This document shows, one piece after another, positions 783-20,500 of a stretch of DNA of 64,000 nucleotides. Below the pieces are notes generated by a model. The model made no database searches. It was given only the letters and a program-made list of their open reading frames with translations, and was not told the DNA's origin. Position 1 is the first letter of the stretch, and every line of letters starts with the position of its first letter. Source of the DNA: Mytilus californianus (Eukaryota); the NCBI RefSeq assembly GCF_021869535.1, contig NW_026262723.1, forward strand, positions 93,372,001 to 93,436,000, read 5' to 3'. Position numbers and translations under genes: made by a program.

Positions 783-1212
783 TAGGACTACGTCCCTCAT
801 TATTAACAAATTGCCGTAATTTGCTTGAACACATATCGGAGAACACATATCTGAGAAGGGTGTCGTTTATCTCTACCACAAGTATTTTTTAAAGACTTTT
901 TGGCGTTCCTGTTGAAGGGAAATCCAGAAAAGCACTTCAGAGGCATTACATTGTTGTTTTCATTTTTTAACCATAAAGTGCTGGCCTTTTTCTCATTTGA
1001 AAACAACATTGCTGTATACAAATGGATGATTTAAGACCAGTGCACTAAATCTACTGTGTGTGTTCAATGAAGGCCTCATGATGCTTTGTTGCTTCTGGTC
1101 CTTCTTTCATATTGCCTTTTTGAGTATATAATCGTTCCACGATTTGGTTGATTTGCGCTTTTAGAATGAATATTAAATATTCAGAAATATATTCATATTT
1201 CCTAATCACCAT
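783..1212 (-). pseudogene. Pseudogene copy (C1) of the unknown-function family also at 7144, 9578 and 13175
   Basis: From ATG at 1212: MVIRKYEYISEYLIFILKAQINQIVERLYTQ..., then in shifted frames RFSALVLNHP, KNTCGRDKRHPSQ and NEGRSP, collinear with C2. Lacks about 10 codons (PAFQTKSKYE) and has in-frame stops and frameshifts. Confidence 0.8.
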
Positions 1213-3349
1213 TTTCAGCATTAATTCACATCATATACTTTCATATCACTTCAAATGTTCCTTTAAGTCTGGTCATTGTGAATGTAAGTTTATGTTAAAG
1301 AGAAGATTTAAAATTATTTACATTCACACTATGTACCATTTAACATGACACAAACACACTTTCTGCTTCAAATATTCAATCAGAAAAAAACTGTATGAAA
1401 CTCACCCTGATAAACAACACCCCACGAATGTATTACTTTTCCATTCAAATTTGACCAATATTGTAAAAAAAAATACTTACTTATCATCAGTTACAATTTC
1501 TGTTTAAATTGTAAAGTTTTAAAATAATTCATCTACCGAACAATTATAATTCACAATTATATGTTTATTGAAATACAAACTCGGAAAACGAAATGTTATT
1601 TATTAATCAAATGTTTTCGTGAAAATGATAAGATGTCATCAAACAAGTAATTAGTGCCTATTGTAAGTTGTCAACCGCTTAAGTTGTTTCTATGGCAATT
1701 AAAATGAACACACTGTATCATTTACTATATAGTTCACAACTAACATAAATATCAAAAAATAAAAAAGTTACAATGTTCTGTACAGTTAAGTGCTACTTTT
1801 ATTTATCAACAATGACCTTTGCCTAAAACAGGTTCTCTATTGCAGAAAGTGGCCAAGGTAATGGCGATTTAAAATTTTTCATGTAGCGGACGTTTAAGCT
1901 TGTTTGTTGTACATTTGACCAATTCTTTAGTTTTTAATATGATTAAATAATGTTCGGACCTTTTTTGTGATCAAACGGATATGAGCTGAGTATGAGATAA
2001 GAATGCTTAAGATGGATCGTACCCCTGTTGATATAAATATAGTCTCCAGTCCATTCGCAAAACTATCATTTATTTCATCTCGCGTCACAGTATTTCTTAA
2101 GTATTTTGAAAATTAAAAAAATATCTTGTTTTTTTAAGCATTTGAAACCTTTTAAAAGTTACCATGTGGAATAATTTTGTGATATCACTATATTTTCACT
2201 TAATGGTAGTTTCACGGTTTCCTATCAACCCATCACAACAGGTCGATCAATGCACAATGCAGTTTTGATATAGGGTTATCTCGCTTCGCTTTTTTCAAAC
2301 AGAATATTTATTAAATGCAAATCTATTAATCGGGAAGTTTTATTTTCGCTAATGTCGCGATAACAGTTGATACGCGAAAAAACTACTTCGAATCTTTAGT
2401 TGAAACTCGATCCGTAGGACAAAGATCGTACGTGAATTGATACCAACTAATACTTATTTGGATATATAAATGGATGAGGGTTTAACTTCTTGTTGCAAAT
2501 ACTACATGTATATCAGACCGAGAAAATGTTGACTTGATAGGCATATGAAGATTGAAGTTGGTTTTAAATCTACCAGATTTTTCTTCCTTATTTTTCGTTG
2601 TCCTTCGAATGATATCATAACAAATACCTACAGATACAGAAACACAGGGCATCATCATGCATAGTGTTGGAAAACTTGACAAAGATATACGTTTGAGATC
2701 TGATTGATAGCATAGATAAATTTCCAAACATGGCTATTCCTAAATTGAATATAATGACGTAGAAGAACCACGAGCAAAATACAATAATAATGAGCATATC
2801 TCTCAAACACGTAAACCTTTTAACTGCATCCACAAGACAACACATGCATAATATTCACAGATACACTACATAATTCAGTTCATAAAAACCAATCTGTGAC
2901 TGTTATTACTGAGAACTGTTTTACAAATGCATGTAAAATAATTCTTGGTAAATATCTACAAACATTTACAGCAGCCTAGAATTATATACGAGTTGTACGA
3001 CTGAAATATGCCATCAGTGCTGTATCATTATAGGCTGTGAACGAAACAAACGAACGTTTATGCTCATAAACCGAAAACTTTTAATGCAATAAAAACTTCT
3101 TAAGACATATCCGCTCATTTTTTTCTTGCACTATTCATGTAATGCTTTGAATTCTTTGCATTTATTAAAATCTAAGAGTGAAAAATATCACAATTTCAAA
3201 AATCCCTGGCATGATTTTATCTAGAAATACAATTTTCAGGGACATATTGGTGCAAAATTTCCATCGTAAAAAGTAGTTGTTACATAATATTTTTGGCGTT
3301 ACTTTAACCGGGTCTCGTATTTGTATTGTCCCCTTTGTGTCTCGAATAA

Positions 3350-3432
3350 TTTAACAGTTTATAAACAGTAATTAACAAAAAGTGACCATATCAATGATAT
3401 GTCATGTCAATGCAGGAGTGCTGAATACTGGT
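3350..3432 (-). mobile_element. Fragment of the upstream part of repeat family B1
   Basis: Reverse complement aligns with 6075-6165 (cagcact..ttgacatga..tcattgatat.gtca..aatta.ctgttta). Confidence 0.55.
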
Positions 3433-3671
3433 AAATAATTTTAAAATCCCAACTTAGTTTTATTTTCTTTCTATAACAAAGAGTTCGATTTCAATTGTTT
3501 AATTTCAACTGGATAGCTGTCCTAAACAGTGGAATGACTTTTCTAAAAATAATATATCAAAATTCCCAATAAGTAAACGAACCTTCTTTTATTGCAGTTT
3601 ATATTGTGGACAGTGAGGTATCTAATTTTGTGAAGGAATTTGCTCTATATTGGTTTATTCGCTTGATGTGT

Positions 3672-3758
3672 TTGAGCTTTTGATATTGCTATTTGATAAA
3701 GGACTTTCCGTTTGAATTTTCCTTGGAGTTCGGTATTTTTGTTATTTTACCTTTTTTA
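3672..3758 (+). repeat. Short interspersed repeat, family F
   Basis: ggactttccgtttgaattttccttggagttcggtatttttgttatttt; a near-identical reverse copy lies at 8080-8160. Confidence 0.7.
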
Positions 3759-4993
3759 TACGCATCATGATAAGATTTATCTCATTATTTAGAAAATTGA
3801 TGTCCATATAAGTATAATTTGAGTACAAAAACATGTTTGTTCACGAGCCAAATTTCCTGTGTGAAATTTTACTAATTTGAAAAATGAAAGATCAGACAAG
3901 GTGCTAATACATTCATATAGGTTTAAATAAGTGTAAAAAATAAGACTGCTATTTATTTGTGTGGTCGTTTTACAAGATTTTATTTTAAATCTTCCAGATT
4001 CCCCTACCTATTTTATACCTATGTAGACTCGTTATTGTTATTGAACCTTATTCAGTTCGAATGGTTAAGTTAACATTGTTTAACATTTAACTCGCTTAAA
4101 ATTCTCCATGCATTTAAATATGTCAGAAAAATAATCATTTGTGAAAAAGTAAATCATTTATTTCAGATATGATATTAAACAATACTGTGTTATATATAAA
4201 ATAAAACATAGAACAGGAGTAAGGAGTTTCAATTTTACCGCTTGGTCAATTAACAAAGAAATGTAACAAATATTAAATGGCTTTTTTGTCGGAATCTGGC
4301 AAATATTCAAAAGGAGTTGGTTAGGATTTTTTTTGGGTGTTTTTATTTAACCGATTATCAATTCTATTTCAATAGTTTCTCTCGTTTATGTTTAATGTTA
4401 TATAATAACTGCTGATTCAAACATTTGACGCATGTTTTAGTGAGCTGTATTCACTATTTTACTTTGAATATGTAATTGTTCAGAGTCAGTACACTAACTA
4501 TGCATTTGATGCTTGATTATGTTTAGATACCTCTGATAGTGTGGTGATTCTAACAAATGCTCCATGAAACATTTTACGATTTATCAACATCTAGTTGATC
4601 TGCTTTCAAAACTGTACATTGGAATAATTGTGAAATTACCGATATGGAAAATGCGGAGATTTGATATGATTGACAATAGTCAACTATCCACCAATGAACA
4701 AGGATTAAACAACTACAGTGTTTACCCATGTGGATTCTAAGACATTTCTCAAGATTTGTGAGAGTAAATAAAATCAAAGTCACTCTCCGGTGCAAACGTA
4801 TAAAAAAACCTTGGCATATCGACCCTATACACAAGGGTTTCTCAAAGCTCTAACAGTTTGAAAAATATTCCGTGTTTTTCATAAAAAAAGAATGGCCAAC
4901 AGAGATAAAGAAATAAAGATAATTGGCATTATCATCAACAAGATGGTTAAATTTATACTGAAAACGTATCACTTCCAACTATATAGTATATGC

Positions 4994-5094
4994 GTTGGCT
5001 TTGCAACTGTTTTGATTCGAGCGCCACGAATTTATCTTATGTAGACGAAACCCGCGTTTGGCGTATCAAATTATAATCCTGGTATCTTTGATGG
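4994..5094 (+). mobile_element. Retrozyme-like repeat B1, degenerate hammerhead layout
   Basis: gagcgcca-CGAATTTA-tcttatgtagac-GAAA(5047-5050)-cccgcgtttggcg-TA; the CUGANGA box is destroyed. Confidence 0.65.
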
Positions 5095-5284
5095 GATTCC
5101 TATGGGAGCCAACTTTTGCCCTTTTATTTAGCCTTTATTCTTTTGAGGCAAACTTTTTCTAAGAGCTTCTTATGATAACCATATTCTTGCTTAGGTGTAT
5201 TCAGAATAGTTGATTGAATTGGTGCTTACTTAAAACTTGTGTAACAAGGTGATTTCAATGATATAATTGAAATTATATAATCGA

Positions 5285-5670
5285 GTTTCACGAAGACCAT
5301 TGTTATTTGGTTGACCGTGACGAAACATTTGGAATTGTCGTAGCCACAACCCCTTCCTCCGTTCTCGTGTTTGACATCACCGACTACGATGCATCATCAG
5401 AATTTTATTTTATAATGGCCAACACAAAAAGTGTCACTAGTTAGACAGGAGCTGCTTACCCTTCTGAAGCTAAACAATCTTTAATGGCTATTTTGTCAGA
5501 ATATAGCAACGATTTAAAGGAGTTTGTTATTTTTTTTTATTTCAATCCTAAGTTTACTCCTATTTTAAGAGATTTAAATTGTTCTTGTGTGCATTTTTTG
5601 CCACTGTATTTTTCATTGTCAGTATTGATTCTATCGGTGATGGTCTCATGTATTCTTTGTCCTCATTTAC
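5285..5670 (+). mobile_element. Degenerate 3' tail of a Penelope-like/RT element, family E
   Basis: Matches 16400-16700 and 16915-17150 (ttgtcgtagccacaacc..caacac..gacaggagctgcttacccttc). Confidence 0.55.
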
Positions 5671-6074
5671 TACTGTAATAACATTTCAAACTTTAACATT
5701 AGACATGTATTAGGGTTTGAGATTTAGAAAAATGTACATTAGGTTAGAAATATGATAATGTTGTACCCAAGACCAATTTCCTAGTGTATGATGTCTTATT
5801 TTTTAACAGGAATAGGAGCACCTTCTGGTGTACATGAAGGTTGCTTCTATAACTAAGAGATGTATGTTGTTTCTTTGTTGTAATTAGTATGCTATTTAAT
5901 TGTTCAATTTTGTTTTGTTAATTCTTTGTCCTGACGTACTGTGATAACGTTTCAAACTTAAAAATTCGGTCTTTAATTAGGATTTGAAATTTACATGTAT
6001 TGCTTATAAAAAAGATAATATCTACAGGTTCGAATAAATACATTAATCAATATGTTGTTCTATGGTGTCTTATA

Positions 6075-6378
6075 TCACCAGACAAGTAGTCAGCACTTCT
6101 ACGTTGACATGAATAATCATAGATATTGTCATATCTATAAATTAACTGTTTACAAAACTTTGAATTGATTGTCCGAAATATATGGATTTTCTACCTAAGA
6201 AATAGATTACCCTGGCTGTATTTGGCAAAAATCTTTCGGATTTTTAGGTCCTGAATGCTCTTCAACTTCATACTTTATTTGGCCTTTTAACTTTTTATTA
6301 GATCGTCACTGCTGGGTCTTGCAGAAGAAACGCGCGTCTGGCGTACAATATTCTGGGCCTGGTATCTTTAATGAGTTT
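6075..6378 (+). mobile_element. Retrozyme-like repeat B1, longest copy (about 300 nt)
   Basis: cgtca-CTGCTGG(6309-6315)-gtcttgcagaa-GAAA(6327-6330)-CGC gcgtctg GCG-TA(6344-6345); flanks shared with copies at 4994 and 15844. Confidence 0.7.
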
Positions 6379-6397
6379 TTTTTTATTACCATATTTG

Positions 6398-6640
6398 ACT
6401 CACCAACCGATTTACACAGGAGCAATACTGTGGTTGTCGTTCGAGAAGCAGTAACTATTTGTCCTCCCGGAGCACCCATGTTCCTCCATGTTTAAATGAG
6501 ATTCGTGTTGCACAATGTATAGTTTTCTGCTTAGTGCTTTGTTTACTGTGTTGGTTCTTTTTTCTTTTTTCTTTTGGCGATTGTGTTGTCTAACCTTCTT
6601 TGATTACTTATTTCGTTTTCCCCTCTATCTTCTTACTTCA
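6398..6640 (+). mobile_element. Degenerate family E tail
   Basis: ccggagcacc..attcgtgttgc..tagttttct..cttttggcgattgtgttgtct, collinear with 16915-17150. Confidence 0.55.
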
Positions 6641-7143
6641 CACTTTTGACACAGTTGATTATTCTTACGGAATAACGTATAGCTTATTTTTTATATTTTT
6701 TACAAAAATTATACTTTTCTACAAAACAATTCAGCATGGTTGTTAGGCAATAAGTATGCATGACACAGCACATTGTAGTATCATTTTAAGCCTACATATT
6801 AATATTTAAATATCAGACAACAAATACTATCAACGTTATTGTCAGATGAACTCAAACAGTTTTGATACCATACTTATCGATTCTTGTTGAATAGTAGAAA
6901 GGAATTACAGATATAAACAGAAGTACGATACGTCTAACAGATCTGTAACAAAACTTTAATATGACATATTTATCAGATCATGCATCTTATATTTGCGTGA
7001 ACTTATTCAATAGTTCGATTGTCATTCCCATGCCTTTTCATAAAATACTTCCGACAGTTACTGTAACATTAATTTGCAAACTTTAAAATGAAAATCGGTT
7101 AAATAAGTCCAGTGATTCCATGATCTAAATGATAAATTATTTG

Positions 7144-7524
7144 TCAAGGACTTTGTCCCTCCACAATAAGCCAGTTCCTAAATTTTGCTGGTACATGTCC
7201 CTGAGGAGGGTGTCGTTTATCTCTATCACAAGCACTATTAATAGTCTTCACTGTAAAGCGCTTTACTTTTCTGGCATTCATTAGGAAACGAATATAGCTA
7301 GATACCGTCGGTTGATTTAACCTCAGTGCACTGAATTTCCTCGGTGTCACCGACGAAGGTCTGTCGATGCTTTGCTGTCCCTGATCCTTATTTGGTGTTA
7401 CTTTTGGTGTATTTAATCGTTCCACAATTTTGTTGATTTCATACTTAGACTTTGTTTGAAAAGCTGGTGCTTTTTGAATGAATATTTCATATTCAGGAAT
7501 ATATTCATAATACCTTTTCGACAT
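7144..7524 (-). CDS. Uncharacterised 126-aa intronless protein, family copy C2
   Basis: True ATG with an in-frame TGA upstream. Shares three blocks with C3 and C4: YEY.PEY...I.KAPAF..ERL.TP, RLNQPTVSSYIR and CD....HPPQ......RNWL.VEG. Confidence 0.8.
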   Translation of the reverse strand: MSKRYYEYIPEYEIFIQKAPAFQTKSKYEINKIVERLNTPKVTPNKDQGQQSIDRPSSVTPRKFSALRLNQPTVSSYIRFLMNARKVKRFTVKTINSACDRDKRHPPQGHVPAKFRNWLIVEGQSP

Positions 7525-8079
7525 TTTACAGCATCAATTCAAATCATAGATTTTTTTATAATATTTCAAATGTTCTTTTGATTCCAGTATCTTTTATAGG
7601 TCTTATATAAAATAGAATATAAACATGATTCTAAATGTTAATATCTTTTTTTTAAATTTACATTCACACTATGTGGCAATCAGTGTCATAAAAACACACT
7701 TTCTATCCTTCAAATTATCCAATTAGAAACACAGCTTGAAAACCAATGAAAACAACATATGTTGCTCATCCTATTGATATCATGCCTAAAATCTTATACA
7801 CAAGCAGTATCATAACACTATGTGAATACTTCTTTTCCATCTGTTTAAATTTCTGTGGAAAAAAGTTTATCAACCGAATATGCTATATGTTATATATGTT
7901 TCTTTTAAACACAAAGTCGTAAATGTTTCAAATTAAGTTTGGGGTGAAAAAAGAAAAGATGTCTTTTGAAACTTGTCAATCGATTGAGTAGTTTTCTATC
8001 ATTATTAAAATGACATGTGGTGTTGTTGATGCATCAAAACCATATATAAATTATATTTAACATACATATTTAAATATAG

Positions 8080-8160
8080 AAAAAAGTCAAATAACAAAAA
8101 TACCGAACTCCGAGGAAAATTCAAATCGGAAAGTCCCTTTTCAAATGGCAAAATCAAAAG
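8080..8160 (-). repeat. Short interspersed repeat, family F
   Basis: Reverse copy of 3672-3758. Confidence 0.7.
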
Positions 8161-9577
8161 AAAGAAAGAAAGAAAGTTTTGCATTAAGTTATTATATTAA
8201 TGTACAAATGTATAGAATAAAAAGTATTTGAAGAACTGCAAAATGTACTATTTTTTTAAATTGTGCCTTTGTAACTTAAAATGGCTCAATAGAGAAAAGA
8301 GGAAAGCAGGTATAAAAGGTTAATGTGTCTTCGGTCCACCATACAAAATAAATGTCTGAATTCCTGTACCGGTCATTTTATAAAAAGACATTTTAGTTTA
8401 AAATATTAGACCCCCCCCTTTTCTTGTTTATTAGATTTTTCTTTTAAATTTGTGTCCAGAATACTTTGAATTTGGATTTTATATGTTTTAATAAATTCAG
8501 GGGTGTTGGTTCTATCTTTATGTACTAGTTTCAATTAGTATAAATCAGAATTCCAAATTCTTCCAGAAGAAACTGGAATTCCAATTTGTATTAGGATGTA
8601 TCTGGTTCATAATGAATCCGAATTTGTATTTTGACAACAACATTCATATGTATCGTTAAAACGTAACTTTTTACCTTATTCCATATACAAAAGTGCGTCG
8701 ATTCGTCCTTTGGCTAAACATATATATCTTGATAAATGAGTATTTAGTTTGATAATAGTGTGCCCGTTTTACATTATTTTTAAGATTATATAAAGATTAA
8801 GCAAACTTCATTTATCTATTTTTCGCGTTCAAATATTCTATCCAAAGGTTTTTGTGATATGAAAAATTGTGTGCCAACAAAATATATTATCATAATTGCT
8901 GTTGATTTAACCGGGGGACTCCGTCATTAGGATTATAGACGCACGTGACAAAGAAAGAATTGAACAACTATTTTAAACAAACAGTTTACTGTCTCATTGA
9001 CGAATACCTCACATCTCCTTTAATTCATATTTAAATAGTAGATTTATTTTAATTAGGTACTGTATAAACAATTCAATATTTGTTCCTGAAGACTTGTATT
9101 GTGTGTTTATTTAAAGTCACCTTTTTCTTTACTTAATGGATTTTCTTTATATATTTTATACTGATATAATGTTTCAAATTTTGATAACAGTTCTGGCAAG
9201 ATTGATCAGTAAAAGCATCAATATATACTAGTCCTTATTGGTATATGTTTTGTTACAGCAACAAAGTCATAAAATTAAGGGCACTTATCAAAAATGCAAA
9301 GAAAATTGAATTATTTCGTGTAAATTGAACATTTTAATTATAGGTTAAAATAAATCATTTTAAACTGATGAAATAGAAACGGGCTATGAATCTGAACAAG
9401 AAGACAATTATGTAAACTCTGTTGATAAATGACCTGAAACGATCAACAACATGGATTGAAAATAAGCTGAAACAATGAAAGTATTCTATATCCCACATCT
9501 TTTTTTATATAAACTTAAATAAAATGAATAGAATTCAATGTAAGAAATATTGCTTGAACTGGTGATCTCAAGTCAAA

Positions 9578-10045
9578 ATGAGAAATCAAAGGATAATTTA
9601 CAGAGGCCCGGGATTTGTACCTCTATCCAAAAATGTGAACTTTGTCAACTATGATTACTTTCCAGAATATATGATTCATATTCCTAAAGCACCTGCATTT
9701 AGAGCGGCTTCTGGTGAAAAAATCAATGAGATTGTAGAAAGGTTAAGCACTCCATCATCATCAACAGCTAGCAGAGAACGCTACATAAATACAGAACCGT
9801 CAGCAGATAAAAGGGACATCGTGCAACCATCACCGGTAGACTGCAGATTAAAAGTTCTTAGATTGAACCAACCAACTGTAGCCAGCTATATTAGATTTCA
9901 GATGAGAAGCAGAAAGGATCGGTTGATCAATGTTGAGGATATTAGGAATTCTTGTGATAAATATAATCGACATCCTCCACAAGGATATATGCAAGCTAGG
10001 TATAGAAACTGGTTGACAGTAGAAGGACATACACTTTGGAATTAA
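9578..10045 (+). CDS. Uncharacterised 155-aa intronless protein, family copy C3
   Basis: True ATG. Blocks YDYFPEYMIHIPKAPAFR..ERLSTP, RLNQPTVASYIR and CDKYNRHPPQ..YRNWLTVEG are conserved against C2 and C4 despite divergent linkers. Confidence 0.85.
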   Translation: MRNQRIIYRGPGFVPLSKNVNFVNYDYFPEYMIHIPKAPAFRAASGEKINEIVERLSTPSSSTASRERYINTEPSADKRDIVQPSPVDCRLKVLRLNQPTVASYIRFQMRSRKDRLINVEDIRNSCDKYNRHPPQGYMQARYRNWLTVEGHTLWN

Positions 10046-12199
10046 GAACTAATGAATGGCTTATAAAATATATTATATGAACTTGCTTATTTTTGTGTTG
10101 TAAGTTTTAAAGTTCATTGTTTATTCCGAGTAGAGACACTTTTCGAAACTGTATTAACATGCTTGAGATTCAAGTGTTACGTGTTGCTACAATCGAAGAA
10201 AAGTGTACAAAGTGTGTTTGTTATTAAATCCATAAAGTAGAGATAATTCACTACATATCAGACTGAATTACTGATAGTTTTATTTGCTTTGAAGCCAAAT
10301 ATATCCCTAAAGATTACATATAAAAAACATAATAACATTAAGAATGCAAAATTCAGTGGGTAAGATATGTTTCGATGCAGGCATCTTGTTAATAATAATT
10401 TATATAAAATGACAGGGATATGTACAGCACTCAGCAAAAAGGTTCTCTGTTTTTTACATCATTTCGCCAGATTAGCTGAATTTGGCAGTTGTTAACAGCA
10501 GACTATATCGTTGAATATGAAATTTTATTGGCTTATTTTGATTGACTGCCACATTTATTATTAAGAGTATTTACAGAAATTGTACTTCTTCTAGTTCCAG
10601 ATATGAGCTATTAGTAGTTCCACTTGTATACTTTGTACCATTTTGTTCTGTTTCGTACGTGTCGAATCATTCTTATATATTAAATTTTAAAATACAAAAT
10701 GGGGATTAAACGTTTGTAGAATGTGGGTGTTGAAATTTCTGCATTGTTTCTGTCGGAAATGTCAGAGTAGTTGCATTCGTTGTTGTATAAATACAATTTT
10801 TCAATAAAAAAAACCTTGAGCTACGAAAAATGATCAATTTTGGTCTTATATATATAAATATGTGGAACGACTGTTTAATCAGCGATCCTTTCTGAAAGCT
10901 TTTAAATATTAATCTTTCTCTAAAAACAAGACCAATATACTGGGTCTGTACCAGCATGCAGTTGAAATTTTCTTTGTTCAATGAGTGTTGTAAAATTTCA
11001 AACTATCGACAAACAGGAAGTGACTGCATGGCAGATGTAAAAATTGCTAACAGGCTACAACTCAACATAATCAAGCTCCAGATAAAAAATAAATTATTCG
11101 CTTCCATAGAAGCCAAGTACAACTTGACGAAAATTTTCCGTGTACAATGAGTGTTACACATATGATTTCAAACTATTATCAGACAGGAAGTGTCTGCACA
11201 GAAGATGTAAAAATTTCAGTGTACAACAATAAATGTTGTAAAATTTCTAACCATGGGCAAACAGGGTGTAGCTGCAGGGCAGATCTATTGATTATACGCT
11301 TCAACTACAAATTATCAAAATAAACCAAATATTCATAAATGAATGACAGACAGAGTCGACCGGCTTCTTGACTTGCTTTCGTCGTTTTCAACGCAGGTTA
11401 TGAAACACATACAGATAGCCATGTTCTACAAAGTCTGAACATTTTCAACAGAACTTGTTTCATAATTTTCCCATTTAGCTGCAATCTGATCATAACTTAT
11501 ATAAGAAATTAAAAAAAACTGTATCCGGAAAGCATTTGTTTCGAACTCGTGTACAGACGGACAGAAGGACGAACGACCGACATACAATGTTTCAACAGTT
11601 TGTGTTGTTCAAGGAGCATACTATAATGGATACAAGATACTTTTTTTTTTATAAAAACTGCATCTTCCATAAACGTACAAAATAAATTAACAATAAAAGT
11701 CCTCTCAACGTAATCAACTTTGTGATCAGTCAACTATTCAAACGTCAGATGCATTAAAAACCTGGTGCATTGACTTTTTTAATACAAGAACATACACAAG
11801 TGATATATGATATTCAAAATAATAAAAAGTGCAAACGAAAGTGACATTTACATGCATACATGCAGGTATATTCATAAGAAAAACGAACATGAATATAGGA
11901 CTGATCTTTTATATAAAAAAATCAATGCTTTCCATCTTCGGTTTTCTTGTAGTGTATTGTGAACTGCTGTTTGTTTGTCTGTCTTTTAAATACCCCTTGA
12001 TATCTTATCTCCCTTTTTATTTAGATCACATCATAACTTAAAAACGACATGTCCAAAATGAATATTTGCATATAACAATACACATATTCATGGTCTAACT
12101 GCATCGTTTCGAACAGCACCCCATACTTCATTTGATATGTCTTGTGCATTGCATAAACGTCTTTAAAATATCCAATCACTTTATAATCTTTCTTCTCCA

Positions 12200-12605
12200 A
12201 CTCTATTATTCATTACATACACAATTTGTTTTTGTATTTCATACATGAATTTTCCTTCTTTCTTTCTTGAGTACCTAAGGCAAACAACAACATTGTGTTG
12301 GCTGCTTTGTCAGCTGATACAATCATGAAACGCTTTCCAAAATCATTTGATTTGTTAGTATATTTTCCGTCGTGATATTGTCTAATAAACCTATTTAGTA
12401 TACAATTACTTTTGAAATGGTTCCTCAACCAGATTCGTGCATTTTATTTCAAGAAAGCATCCACTGAATTTGATCAGTTTTCTCTCTATTGTGACATCAT
12501 TAATTTCATTGATGTCGACAGGCGAAATTTACAAAATAATATAAACTATAAGCTATCATCTCAATTACTTCCCTTTCAAGTCTTTATAGTGCGGTGACCT
12601 ATTAT
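12200..12605 (-). mobile_element. Degenerate Penelope-like RT element fragment
   Basis: Broken frame with KRFMIVSADKAANT, resembling the recalled PLE-type motif V(V/P)ADKAxNNxV just upstream of the RT core; many stops. Confidence 0.45.
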
Positions 12606-13174
12606 TTTATTAATATTTTTTTTTAGTTAACGATATAAACTACATTTTGGCATATATGAAGTATTTTGCCATATTTTGTTCATAATCCTTAACTACCTCT
12701 ATGTCTTGGTATAGGTTCATCCAGATGAGGGTGGTACAAAACAGTCTGGGCTAAGTCTTATTCATCCTGGTAATTTTAAGTGCAATCTCTAACGGCCGTG
12801 AATAGTTGAGATATATCATATCTAATTCACTATACTCATTTAATCTCATTTAACTGTTCTTATCGACCTCTTCATACAAAGTCTTCGGGTTTAAATTTTT
12901 TAAAGTTAAAGTCTGTTTTTAATTGGTATTGTCAACTTAAAACAAATTTCTTTAAAACATTCTCATTTCATTTTTACTATTCCATACAAAAAAATCGATA
13001 TATTTATACAGTGTTTACACATTCTTTTTATATCTTCTTTCAATATATATTTGTAATATTACCTAGGAATACAGTCGATTAAATGCAATCTAAAACGATG
13101 TCTGATCTGCTAAGCGATAAAAAAATGTTATTTATGACACATAATAAACAGATTCATCAAGAAGGGTCTAAACA

Positions 13175-13702
13175 TTATATATCATAATCTAACGAATCTA
13201 AACTACTTTTGTTCGTATTTGTTGAGAGAAAGCTAGATCTCATACTTTTCGTACCATTGACATTTAACCAGTTCTTGTACGCCATTGGGAAATACCTCTG
13301 TGATGGTGGTAAATTAAGTCTGTCACAAGCTTTTGAAATTTCTGTTACCTTCATTTTTCGTTCATTAGCACTCCTCATTCGCAGTCTGATATAACTTGCT
13401 ACCGTTGGCTGACTTAATCTCTCAACACTACAATTTTGAGATTCATATGAAGATGGTTCTGGGTGTAGAGGTTTGACCTCCGATTCTGTTTCCTGTATGG
13501 GAGTTCTCATCCGAGGTGTGTATAACCGTTTAGATATTTCTGTAGCTTTACTTCCCGACACAGTTCTGAATGCAGGTGCTTTCGGAATGTACGCTTTGTA
13601 TTCCGGTACATATTCGTAGGTAATGAAATTAGAATTCGTTTTTACATCCACATAAACAGGCTTTCTGGCACTTTTTCGCTGATTGTCTACTTTCCGTTTC
13701 AT
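13175..13702 (-). CDS. Uncharacterised intronless protein, family copy C4 (175 aa from ATG 13702; alternative ATG at 13789)
   Basis: The supplied ORF starts at a GTG (13813). Blocks YEYVPEYKAYIPKAPAFR..KRLYTP, ERLSQPTVASYIR and CDRLNLPPSQ..YKNWLNVNG; NSNFITY aligns with NVNFVNY of C3. Confidence 0.85.
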   Translation of the reverse strand: MKRKVDNQRKSARKPVYVDVKTNSNFITYEYVPEYKAYIPKAPAFRTVSGSKATEISKRLYTPRMRTPIQETESEVKPLHPEPSSYESQNCSVERLSQPTVASYIRLRMRSANERKMKVTEISKACDRLNLPPSQRYFPMAYKNWLNVNGTKSMRSSFLSTNTNKSSLDSLDYDI

Positions 13703-14393
13703 TGTCCTGTTCTCTAAAGAAATGTTTGTGCTGTATATATTCCTAATGTTGTGTTTCTGAACAGATTGAAACCCTGTACTAAAAGCCATTACTATCCAAC
13801 GCAAAAATGTCACAAGTTACAATAAAATGTATATGTAGTATTGTGCAAACATTGATAAATGTGAATCTATTGGCTTGATTTTTAAAATATACACTATTCA
13901 CTTGTGCGAATAAACTTCCTTATTAAGTGAGTTGCTAAAGGTGAAAAAATGAGAAGATTGCATCAATATCTTCAATTATCAATCACTAAGGAAAACGTCA
14001 AATGCGTTAAGGGTCCTACAATTCATGTGTCTATAGCAAAAACAAACAAAAGATAAAGTTTGATAAATAGAAATACAAACATACTTATTAAAGGTACTAT
14101 AGCATTCTGTATACCAATAAAGGAAAGTTTAAATATTTTTATCAATCATACTTAAAGAAAGCAAACGTGTCAGGCTATTTAAGTTAAATGCAAAATTAGA
14201 GAGAAATGACATTCAACAAATCGTTTGTGGTGTATCACGATTTATATTGTCATAAGTAATTGACATTTGTCTGGTAAACCAGTGTGTGCGCAGATTGTAA
14301 AACAGTTTATTTATTACAAGTGTTAAAACCCTTGCAGGTAGTAGATAACTTAAAATGAACATATAATAGCTGAACACATGAACAGAAAAGGGT

Positions 14394-17531: not shown

Positions 17532-20500
17532 CTGAAAGAATAAAATCAGATCAAATTATTGAAAAACTTAAAAATACAGCAATTGTTTTAATGAGGCATT
17601 AATATTCATTTGTTCAACCAAAATGCATGCAGTATCACCTCGTCGTTTGACAACACTGCGAGGATGTATTTATCCTTTCGTTTTAAAACACTTGATATCT
17701 TTAAATGTCATTACCAGCAAGATATGCTTAAAAGTAATGTTACAATTGCATAAATATACAGTAAATTTTAACACATGTGCAAAACAGAGACAAGTGCAAT
17801 GATATTACTTGGATTTAACTAAGCCCCGTTTTCAAAATAATTAATCTACCAAACAGTTGACTGGGGTGTCGAAATGTGGTCATCACTGATTTCTCCCGTC
17901 CGGCAGTAAAGCCCTAGCTAAAAAGGGGCGTCCGTTAAGCTGTGCGTTATGTATAAATACGCGGCCACGTCCGGTTGAAATGGGGACGTTAAATCCGATG
18001 CCTCGTGAAGTGTGATTGTCACGCTCTCTGCACGTTAAAGAATCCTTGCAACAACTCTCTGCGGGGTATGTATGTGGCCTGTTGCAAGACATAATTTTAT
18101 ACCAAATCCAGCATACCCTCGTTTTCCAGCGATAGTCCGTAGAACCTACCATTTGTAATAATTGTTAATTTTGTTCATGTTCAGAATATGCATGAAATAT
18201 TGGCAATGGACATAAAACAAACAACAATCAATCAATCATTAAGAATGACAACCTCCTGTTTTGCTAATTTAGTTTAGAACATAAAATACTTCCACACTGA
18301 CTGGTGAATTGAAATTTTGAGCAAGATACAGTTGCCTTTATACTGCTATATTATAAACTTATTTGATTAAAATGGTGTATGAAAATTAAAAATTAGTACA
18401 AGTTTTTAGTACTCAGGCTATTATCTGAATAATCGATATCTTATAGATGACCATCATGTCACATTCAAATTCAAATTCTTTATAACCTTGAACTTAATAG
18501 TTCATCGGTGTCAAAATAAAATTTCAAATTAAACAAGTAAACAGACAGAGAACGTTCATGTTATAATGTTGTCTCTGATTTCAAATGCAGTAAAATGTAT
18601 TTTCTTAAATTATTTAACTGTTTGATGTTTTTTATACTTAAACGTTCAATAAGTTTCGTTACTGGCGTCAAATTTTAATAGAAAGGTTAACAGCTTAATC
18701 CCATCGCGTGCTCCCTGGTCTGTTTCTTCGTTATTTATCGGTTGCACATACAGAAAATATTTATTTTTAATGGAACTGGAATTATTTTGTATTACACATT
18801 TTGTTAGTCTTAGTAATAAAATTATGTTATTGTACTAAAAGAAGGTTGCCTCAGGAAAAACATTTTATTTAAATACAATATTTAAATTGCGAAATACGAT
18901 GAAGGTAGCAACGTTAGAGAGTTATATATTATAGCTGATAAAAACTTACATGTTGGTTAAAGGCGGCATAACTCAATATATTTATGAGATGAAAAACTGA
19001 TAGCTTACAGAAATTAATTTAGAAATTCGAAAAAAAAATGAATGGTGTTATTTGGAATATACCGTCATACGAACGAGATCTATATTTATTTCTTTCAAGA
19101 AAAGCCTTCGCATTTGAATTCGTTTACTTTTAACATGAACAATAGATTTTACAACTCTGATATACAATGAATATACAGCTGTTTGTATTAAGTTAATGAA
19201 TACTTAAAAAAAAATAATGTCGAAATGCAATGTTATTTCAGCGGAAACAAAACCCCTCAAAATGCATTTAACCCCAATTTAGGAAACACAAATTATATCG
19301 TGACATATTCAACAATTCCATCCAATTTTTCAAGTGATTAAATGACAATTTTACACCAGAAATGATGAATATTTTTGGCTTTAATTCAACACATACTTCA
19401 AAGCTGCATCACTAAAGCTATTTTATTAAATGTTCAATCACACGCAGCTGGCATTTTGTTAAATATGAAAATTTCACGTTGTATGCATACTCTTTTCCAT
19501 TTAATGTTTACTTCTTACTTTTTCTATATTTCAATTAGCCAAATGACTGCTTTTGTTGAATAAAACAACAAATATCCTCTAAAAAATGAAAATAACTATT
19601 TATAAATTCCATGCGTCCTAAGCGCTTTTCTGGATTTACCTTCACCAGGAACGCTCAAAGCCGAATATTTGAAAGCGAAGGATGTATAAAAACCGAAACA
19701 GTTAAATAGCTATATGACGGAAAATAAACCAAATAATATCCAAATAGCTCTTAACTGACACAAAAGTTACATATAATATTCTTTGATATGTGATAAAACT
19801 CTTATGTAGAGTTCTATGCATGTATTTAGACTAAATTTGATAATACAGCATCAGAAACTTGTAAGACGTGTTCATTGCAATACCTTATTACTGTAAAAGA
19901 CATATACCCCTTTCCAAAACTTAAATCACTATCTAATTACAAAAAAAAAATCAACCGATACAAAAATGCTAGTTTTTTAATGTGATGACAAATCCTTTCA
20001 AGATGGATCTGTTTTCCTTGTTAAATCAACACCAATAGAATAACACCAATACTTACATTTTCCGTAAACCAGTTCGTTTGGTGCCCAGATTGGAGGAGGT
20101 GCTATTTTAGTGGGTGGGGTTTCGTAATGCAAATCAGCTGTCCACAGCTTTGTAGTAGCTTCTGGTATTGGAGACAATGTTGTCGGAGTTTTCATTGTTG
20201 TTGTTGTTGTTGCTGTTGTTGTTGTAACTGTTGTTGGAGTTATATGACGATGCGTTGTTGGTTTTGGTAATATTTTTCTGGTCGTATTTGACGTCAAATT
20301 TAATACTTTATCCCTTTCTATCTTTTGTAAGGTCGATGATAATGTGTGCGTCAGAGGAAATGGCACAACTGATGATGAGCATTTTTTACCAAAGTCGTCC
20401 AGAGATAAAGACCAGACCATGCTTCCACCATATCCTTCCCTGGCTATCCATTCCGCCTACAATTACTCCATAGTTTTAATATAGCGAAATAACTTGGAAA

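What the first reader, a model, noticed from the sequence alone, without database searches (positions are those of the whole stretch)
783..13702. Four-member cluster of an unrecognised intronless gene family with three conserved blocks
Seen: C2 (7144-7524, -), C3 (9578-10045, +) and C4 (13175-13702, -) are intact single-exon ORFs, and C1 (783-1212, -) is a broken copy. They share block A Y[DE]Y.PEY...I.KAPAF[RQ]..S......I..RL.TP, block B RL[NS]QPTV[AS]SYIR..M and block C CD[RK]....P.Q......[RK]NWL.V.G, joined by unalignable linkers of different length. Inference: blocks conserved amid free linker divergence point to purifying selection on an old local gene family. I cannot assign it to any named domain, and there is no signal peptide or TM segment.
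Basis: partly seen in the sequence, partly recalled or inferred. Interest (0 to 1): 0.78.

Follow-up and report, generated by a model that had tools for sequence, protein, structure and literature searches.

The report
Mollusc-only two-helix-motif small protein family
Three intact genes and one dead copy in this mussel window belong to an unnamed, mollusc-restricted family of small, basic, mostly disordered proteins. They are under purifying selection, and their repeated helix motif faintly resembles one used by proteins that bind the outside of flagellar microtubules.

Summary
C2 (7144-7524, -), C3 (9578-10045, +) and C4 are intact single-ORF paralogues, and C1 (783-1212, -) is a decayed C2-type copy.

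Two corrections:
- C4 most likely starts at the ATG at 13789 (204 aa), which adds a fourth conserved block, MAFxxxYxxIxxxNIRNIYS.
- The end of block A and block B are two copies of one ~20-residue motif, SxxE(V/I)xxIVxRLxxPT.

The family has no Pfam match and no full-length match to any solved structure. An exhaustive profile search found 87 cluster representatives. Every named one is a mollusc (bivalves and gastropods), annotated only as uncharacterized.

Selection is purifying. dN/dS against Mytilus coruscus orthologues is 0.05 for C4 and 0.29 for C3, and the blocks are more constrained than the linkers. C4 is transcribed without introns. C2 and C3 were seen only in contigs of a related species.

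AlphaFold gives no globular fold. Only the motif helices are confident.

A motif-only profile ranks trypanosomatid ArcMAP/MOP23 proteins first in the PDB. These are outer-surface doublet-microtubule binders that use one arginine helix per protofilament. The score comes from summed repeats, so this is a lead (about 30%), not a membership.

Overall this is a real, uncharacterised family of moderate interest.

The parts
783..1212 (-). C1, a decayed C2-type pseudogene
   Evidence: tblastn finds pieces in three frames. It has two in-frame stops and a 9-codon deletion of the PAF core.
7144..7524 (-). C2 coding sequence, 126 aa. It lacks block 0. PRAPAF-type block at 7456-7509, motif 1 at 7405-7455, motif 2 at 7288-7329, block C at 7156-7230.
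   Evidence: A contig of a related species' run covers 6980-7527. Nearest relative is P0009, 70% identity.
9578..10045 (+). C3 coding sequence, 155 aa. Block 0 remnant at 9584-9613, PRAPAF block at 9650-9703, motif 1 at 9704-9754, motif 2 at 9854-9895, block C at 9953-10027.
   Evidence: It is 94% identical to M. coruscus CAC5402260.1. dN/dS is 0.29. A contig of run X5 covers 9552-10127.
13175..13789 (-). C4 coding sequence with revised start, 204 aa. This is the full ancestral architecture. Block 0 at 13730-13789, PRAPAF block at 13565-13618, motif 1 at 13514-13564, motif 2 at 13385-13426, block C at 13253-13327.
   Evidence: It is 99% identical to the M. coruscus 204-aa protein P0150. dN/dS is 0.046.
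11717..13941 (-). Extent of the C4 transcript as assembled in M. coruscus run contigs. There is no intron, the leader is about 130-150 nt, and the 3' UTR is 0.6-1.45 kb.
   Evidence: Contigs L006-L009 are colinear with the window. Three of the four begin at 13921-13941. Stranded raw RNA reads and contigs lie on 11764-12899.
13817..13852 (-). Short upstream ORF (11 codons) in the C4 leader
   Evidence: It starts at the only ATG between the contig 5' ends and the main ATG. Its function was not tested.

Best explanation
Shown: C2, C3 and C4 are functional members, and C1 a dead one, of an unnamed mollusc-restricted gene family. The family encodes small (126-204 aa), basic (pI about 10), hydrophilic proteins with no globular fold.

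The ancestral architecture, kept by C4, has four parts:
- an N-terminal block, MAFxxxYxxIxxxNIRHIYSG;
- an aromatic/proline block, EYxPEYxxx(I/L)P(R/K)APAFR;
- two copies of an N-capped amphipathic helix motif, SxxE(V/I)xxIVxR(L/V)xxPT, with an invariant arginine, set 34-96 residues apart (median about 48);
- in this subfamily, a C-terminal block, CxRxxxxPSQRYFPxAYKNWL.

C3, and then C2, arose by local duplication with loss of the N-terminus.

Inferred: the conserved pieces are docking elements that fold on a partner, and the free linkers are only tethers. The two arginine helices would bind two equivalent, neighbouring sites. My preferred partner is the microtubule lattice, probably axonemal, with one helix per protofilament. 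This is how trypanosomatid ArcMAP/MOP23 proteins bind, and SPMAP2 (THEG) occupies the same niche in mammalian sperm.

Confidence splits as follows: real, selected, disordered motif-protein family about 0.9; bivalent docking about 0.5; microtubule lattice as the partner about 0.3.
For: - Paralogy at E 1e-23 to 1e-34.
- Purifying selection that is stronger in the blocks.
- 87 representatives in the exhaustive profile search, and 91 proteins in the word-index search with nothing between E 2e-8 and 5. All named ones are Mollusca.
- Tandem clusters also occur in L001, L010 and L011, and adjacent locus tags in Mactra, Mizuhopecten and Mercenaria point the same way.
- The AF2 model has pLDDT 67 and pTM 0.30. 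Only residues 61-90 and 111-130 (the motif regions) are confident, as a hairpin plus helices.
- The two-copy motif with an invariant Arg is seen in 47 members.
- The motif profile A5 against 177,635 PDB sequences ranks MOP23A (E 0.001), MOP23B (0.005) and ArcMAP4 (0.007) first. ArcMAP1 and ArcMAP2 are also listed.
- The full-length profile independently put ArcMAP2, MOP23C and MOP23B among its 4 hits.
- Control profiles of block 0 and the PRAPAF block gave only unrelated hits at E 0.3 or worse.
- ArcMAP helices bind successive protofilaments through a conserved Arg that pairs with alpha-tubulin D431 (PMC7617938).
- Repeat spacing in ArcMAP/MOP23 is about 41 residues (positions), which lies within the mollusc range.
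- C4 is transcribed from its own strand.
Against: - The ArcMAP scores are sums over homologous internal repeats. The best single stretch is 12 bits (E about 1).
- Unrelated proteins reach similar or higher single-stretch scores (uL4m, 14.8 bits). Designed helical repeats reach E 0.02-0.06 in the same search, because SxxE...IVxR is a generic capped helix.
- The same summing effect produced a plainly false hit to an Acropora discoidin-repeat protein.
- There are only two motif copies here, against four or more in ArcMAPs.
- No THEG, SHIPPO or other axonemal Pfam signal was found.
- No X-box excess was found near the promoters.
- No tissue information was obtained. C2 and C3 were not seen in RNA of the window's own species.
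- No literature or proteome link was found.
Confidence: 0.35

Rival explanations
1. Same family and same disordered motif architecture, but the partner is not the microtubule. These would be basic nuclear, chromatin-binding or RNA-binding proteins, for example spermatid-specific or stress-specific. The positive charge drives nucleic-acid binding and the motifs recruit other factors.
For: pI is 9.2-10.2, K+R is 16-21% and S+T is 12-21%. There is no globular fold. Intronless tandem genes with low bulk expression are typical of germline-biased genes.
Against: No DNA-binding or RNA-binding domain or motif was recognised. What is conserved are hydrophobic and aromatic motifs and one arginine, not charge patches. 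The linkers that carry most of the charge evolve almost freely.
Confidence: 0.25
2. The proteins are short-motif regulators or inhibitors of an enzyme or a dimeric signalling protein, in the manner of heat-stable phosphatase or kinase regulators. The two helices would clamp a dimeric partner.
For: The architecture of conserved short motifs joined by free linkers, and the bivalent repeat.
Against: By inspection of the alignments there is no RVxF, SILK or other known docking motif. No similarity to any regulator family was found in Pfam or the PDB.
Confidence: 0.15
3. The ORFs are neutral leftovers, such as retrocopies or chance ORFs in AT-rich DNA, with no protein function.
For: One copy (C1) is dead. 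C2 and C3 were not seen in RNA of the window's species. The window is about 30% G+C, which favours stop codons rather than long open frames.
Against: dN/dS is 0.05-0.29. Block-specific constraint is seen. Orthologues are intact across bivalves and gastropods. C4 is transcribed from its own strand. The dead copy shows what decay looks like here.
Confidence: 0.03

Closest known systems
ArcMAP1-4 (Leishmania/Crithidia; PDB 9e78, 9y6s) and MOP23A-C (PDB 9e2g, 9e5c): outer-surface proteins of the axonemal B-tubule
   Same: They are small (166-261 aa) proteins without a globular domain. They are built from repeated helices carrying the motif (S/T)xx(E/D)xxxxVxR(L/M)(Y/S), some followed by xP(K/H). 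The repeat spacing of about 41 residues overlaps that of the mollusc proteins. They are the top PDB hits of the motif profile.
   Different: They have four or more helices, against two here. They have no counterpart of block 0, the PRAPAF block or block C. They are kinetoplastid proteins. Similarity is at motif level only, with a full-length profile E of 0.3-2, so it may be convergent or chance.
SPMAP2/THEG and SPMAP2L (mammalian sperm doublet microtubule outer proteins; Pfam THEG repeat PF14912)
   Same: PMC7617938 says they occupy the same structural niche as the ArcMAPs. From my own memory, which was not tested here, the THEG repeat ends in L(S/A)xPK, like the RLSxP(T/K) here.
   Different: None of 77 or 47 family members hits Pfam THEG. 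No SPMAP2 chain appears in the PDB motif search. As I recall the motif, its arginine sits in a different register.
Sperm-tail PG-rich (STPG/SHIPPO) repeat proteins such as ODF3/CIMAP1 (Pfam PF07004)
   Same: From memory only: a tyrosine followed within about 10 residues by (K/R)xAPA(F/Y), as in EYxPEYxxxxPRAPAFR.
   Different: No Pfam SHIPPO-rpt signal even at E up to 10. The block occurs once here rather than as a repeat, and there is no PGPG.
CFAP77 (Pfam PF14825)
   Same: It was the only named cluster near C3 in the language-model feature search (score 0.75).
   Different: The score is below the level the tool calls a lead. There is no sequence match.

Membership tests
Unnamed mollusc family (MAF / PRAPAF / IVxRL-PT proteins) defined here | N-terminal block MAFxxxYxxIxxxNIRHIYSG | tested here: met
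   C4 has it at residues 1-20 when started at 13789. C3 keeps only NQRIIYRGPG, and C2 and C1 lack it.
Unnamed mollusc family (MAF / PRAPAF / IVxRL-PT proteins) defined here | EYxPEYxxxxP(R/K)APAFR block followed by two copies of SxxE(V/I)xxIVxR(L/V)xxPT with an invariant Arg | tested here: met
   Present in C2, C3 and C4. In this subfamily the N-terminal half of motif 2 is degenerate. Profile E-values to family members run from 1e-10 to 1e-68.
ArcMAP/MOP23 outer-surface doublet-microtubule proteins | At least four helices, each with a conserved arginine that contacts alpha-tubulin D431 on successive protofilaments B04-B08 (PMC7617938) | tested here: inconclusive
   There are two motif helices with an invariant Arg, not four. 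The motif profile ranks MOP23A, MOP23B and ArcMAP4 first, at E 0.001-0.007, but these are summed repeat scores. Tubulin contact cannot be tested with these tools.
ArcMAP/MOP23 outer-surface doublet-microtubule proteins | Full-length sequence homology | tested here: not met
   The full-length profile A4 gives E 0.31-2.1 with high composition bias. The narrower profile A2 gives none.
SPMAP2/THEG (PF14912) | THEG repeats recognised by the Pfam model | tested here: not met
   There is no THEG hit at E up to 10 in 47 members, or at E up to 0.01 in 77.
STPG/SHIPPO repeat (PF07004) | Repeated PGPGxY...APA(F/Y)S units recognised by the Pfam model | tested here: not met
   No hit.
Retrogene-derived tandem family | An intronless copy derived from an intron-bearing parent, with poly(A) or target-site-duplication traces | tested here: inconclusive
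   The coding sequence and assembled C4 transcript are intronless. Three-exon relatives exist in the Ruditapes cluster beside an intronless one. Poly(A) and duplication traces were not searched. The duplications are too old (dS saturated) for such traces to be expected.

The most novel reading that the evidence does not exclude
Molluscs have their own family of 'arc'-type proteins on the outer surface of axonemal microtubules. In these, two arginine helices staple neighbouring protofilaments and the MAF, PRAPAF and C-terminal blocks fix the register. They would fill the niche held by ArcMAP/MOP23 in trypanosomatids and by SPMAP2 (THEG) in mammalian sperm. The shared (S/T)xxExxxxVxRL(Y/S)xP motif would then be either an ancient eukaryotic tubulin-binding helix or a striking convergence.
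Probability: 0.25. Interest if true: 0.62.

Novelty: new variant of a known kind. Interest (0 to 1): 0.42.

Why it matters
The family is conserved across bivalves and gastropods, clustered in several genomes, under clear purifying selection, and absent from Pfam and from the literature searched. It is therefore a genuine gap in mollusc annotation.

If the motif resemblance to ArcMAP/MOP23 reflects function, it would give a sequence signature for finding outer-surface protofilament-stapling proteins in animals. Cryo-EM has so far found these lineage by lineage. Mussel sperm and gill cilia could then serve as a test system.

If the resemblance is chance, this remains one more lineage-restricted disordered-protein family. 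That is useful for annotation but not surprising.

Tried and rejected
- Pfam on the three proteins and on 77 and 47 relatives: no shared family.
- PDB by sequence with the narrow profile: only immunoglobulin light-chain chance hits.
- Foldseek against the PDB and a shape search of the ESM Atlas with the AF2 model: nothing (TM 0.25 or less).
- Atlas feature search: only a sub-threshold CFAP77 row for C3 and nothing for P0048. The third call failed because the service was busy.
- Profiles of block 0 and the PRAPAF block against the PDB: random hits only.
- RFX X-box scan: 22 matches against 19 expected, none at the three promoters.
- Exact-protein look-ups for C2, C3 and C4: not on record.
- Paper searches for K1QXK2, LOC identifiers and SRR run numbers: zero hits.
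- Supplements of a multi-species sperm-proteome paper: no K1QXK2. The oyster sperm-proteome paper is not in the library.
- Repeating the word-index search at E up to 5 returned the same 91 proteins. It showed only that there are no borderline candidates.
- The Acropora 1514-aa hit is a false positive: eight identical discoidin strands, RLNPPIMARYIRFR.
- A tRNA-derived origin for the repeat at 8080-8148: no tRNA found.
- I did not type ArcMAP or THEG sequences in for a profile-profile comparison, because no tool returned them as references.
Full report
**Observation**

The window is AT-rich animal DNA, about 30% G+C. The ORF list shows C2 at 7144-7524 (-), 126 aa, and C3 at 9578-10045 (+), 155 aa.

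tblastn of each protein against the window links the three at E 2e-23 to 1e-34 and 39-48% identity. It finds C1 only as fragments in three frames, and finds no other copy in the 64 kb. C1 is closest to C2. It has at least two frameshifts, two in-frame stops and a 9-codon deletion that removes the PAF core.

The proteins are hydrophilic and basic, with no stretch that could be a membrane segment or signal peptide.

**Species and orthologues**

C3 is 94% identical to a Mytilus coruscus protein and 84% identical to a Mytilus edulis protein. Both are annotated only as unnamed or uncharacterized.

The syntenic M. coruscus locus, L005, has the same order: LDLa-chitinase, then C4, then C3. Synonymous divergence from M. 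coruscus is 0.08-0.14, so the window is a congener. Earlier notes of this scan call the genome the California mussel.

**Revised anatomy**

Relatives in scallop, oyster, clams and unnamed contigs begin with a conserved block, MAFxxxYxxIxxxNIRHIYSG. The M. coruscus annotation gives a 204-aa protein that is 99% identical. C4 therefore most likely runs 13175-13789. C3 keeps only the tail of the block, and C2 has lost it.

Across 47 members, the second half of block A and block B turn out to be two copies of one motif of about 20 residues. Its consensus is (L/V)SxxE(V/I)xxIVxR(L/V)xxPT. The arginine is the only invariant residue besides the start methionine, and the copies lie 34-96 residues apart. 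In the mussel subfamily the first half of copy 2 has decayed, but RL(N/S)QPTV is kept. Block C occurs only in a subset of the family that includes this cluster.

**Extent of the family**

The exhaustive profile search of 1.84 billion cluster representatives found 87 proteins at E up to 0.001. The word-index search with the wider profile found 91, with nothing between E 2e-8 and 5.

Every hit with a name is a mollusc:
- Bivalves: Pecten, Mizuhopecten, Magallana (K1QXK2), Pinctada, Mercenaria, Mactra, Ruditapes, Mya, Potamilus and Mytilus.
- Gastropods: Biomphalaria and Elysia.

All are 'uncharacterized' or 'hypothetical'. Two Biomphalaria entries are labelled filaggrin, presumably an automatic label.

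No Pfam family is shared by any two members. One non-mollusc hit, an Acropora discoidin/EGF protein, is a false positive made of eight identical weak matches.

Tandem clusters recur. There are two paralogues on L001, three on L010 and at least four on the Ruditapes contig L011. Adjacent locus tags in Mactra, Mizuhopecten and Mercenaria point the same way.

In Ruditapes, two members have three coding exons whose borders coincide with the blocks: block 0, then PRAPAF plus motif 1, then motif 2. A neighbouring member is a single exon. Intronlessness is therefore a trait of a subfamily, not of the whole family.

A maximum-likelihood tree splits the mussel subfamily into a C2/C3-type clade (support 96/90) and a C4-type group. 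C2 lies nearest the C3 type.

**Selection and expression**

Against M. coruscus, dN/dS is 0.046 for C4 (16 synonymous, 3 non-synonymous changes) and 0.29 for C3. Against the L001 orthologue it is 0.20 for C3. In the deeper pairs, pN/pS is 0.20-0.31 in the blocks against 0.42-0.79 in the linkers, with pS near saturation.

Four M. coruscus run contigs carrying the C4 orthologue are colinear with the window from 13941 down to 11717, without a gap. Three of them start within 20 bases of each other, which suggests a defined 5' end and an intronless mRNA.

In the one raw RNA run of the window's species, reads lie on the C4 3' UTR with only one mate orientation, at low depth. None lie on C2 or C3. 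Contigs of two other runs of that species also cover the C4 3' UTR. A run of a related species has contigs over C2 and C3. The tissues are unknown.

**Structure**

AlphaFold2 with the 47-sequence alignment gives mean pLDDT 67 and pTM 0.30. Confidence is above 78 only at residues 61-90 and 111-130, which are a small hairpin plus helices covering the PRAPAF block and the two motifs. Fold searches found nothing.

The conserved hydrophobic positions of the motif (relative to the arginine: -6, -3, -2, +1) lie on one face of a helix that begins with an SxxE cap and ends at a proline. With no core of its own, that face is presumably buried on a partner. This last step is inference.

**The lead to microtubule-binding proteins**

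The full-length wide profile gave only four weak PDB hits. Three of them are ArcMAP2, MOP23C and MOP23B.

A 23-column profile of 71 motif instances ranked MOP23A (E 0.001, five stretches), MOP23B (0.005) and ArcMAP4 (0.007) first among 177,635 sequences. ArcMAP1 and ArcMAP2 appeared lower. Equivalent profiles of the other two blocks gave only unrelated hits at E 0.3 or worse.

ArcMAPs are paralogous proteins that arc across protofilaments B04-B08 on the outside of trypanosomatid doublet microtubules. Each of their four or more helices binds one protofilament, often through a conserved arginine paired with alpha-tubulin D431. SPMAP2 and SPMAP2L fill the same niche in mammalian sperm (PMC7617938). 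The ArcMAP/MOP23 repeats are about 41 residues apart (positions), which lies within the mollusc range.

**Cautions on that lead**

- The E-values come from adding weak matches to homologous internal repeats. The best single stretch is 12 bits.
- An unrelated ribosomal protein scores higher on a single stretch.
- Designed helical repeats reach E 0.02-0.06, because SxxE...IVxR is a generic capped helix.
- The Acropora artefact shows how repeat summing misleads.
- There are only two helices here.
- No THEG or SHIPPO signal exists.
- There is no X-box excess.
- I found no tissue or proteome evidence.

I therefore treat 'works like an ArcMAP' as the best single guess, at roughly 30%. I do not file the family as a member of the ArcMAP family.

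**Verdict**

What it adds to current knowledge is an unnamed, mollusc-restricted family with four features: a defined four-block architecture, an internal two-fold helix repeat, mixed three-exon and intronless members, and old tandem clusters. Function is unproven. The most testable idea is bivalent docking on the microtubule lattice.

Noticed in passing
window 8080-8148: A stretch of about 68 bases is covered at depths of thousands in every RNA run and contig set laid, with unrelated loose ends on both sides. It behaves as a very abundant, transcribed short interspersed repeat. ARAGORN finds no tRNA there.
   Followed up: partly
window 10900-11100: A second repeat-like stretch has a depth of 518 in the related species' run (X5) but only 5-31 in runs of the window's species.
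   Followed up: no
L011 (Ruditapes philippinarum JAKTTH010010591.1) 1-22416: The cluster holds at least four family members. Two have three coding exons whose borders match the protein blocks, and one neighbour at 17915-18493 is a single exon. Further partial matches at 4170-4376 and 5510-5656 may be dead exons.
   Followed up: partly
L001 (JGI metagenome 3300042738, contig Ga0454335_557517): A 5.9-kb contig filed under a metagenome carries a tandem C3-type and C4-type pair. It is therefore almost certainly mussel host DNA in that sample.
   Followed up: no
window 13817-13852 (-): An 11-codon upstream ORF lies in the C4 leader, ahead of the main ATG. The main ATG has A at -3 and G at +4.
   Followed up: no
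   Followed up: partly
P0045 (Acropora millepora XP_044171674.1): The narrow family profile scores E 1.6e-9 on this protein only because the discoidin strand RLNPPIMARYIRFR is repeated eight times identically. This warns against trusting summed repeat scores with short motif profiles.
   Followed up: yes
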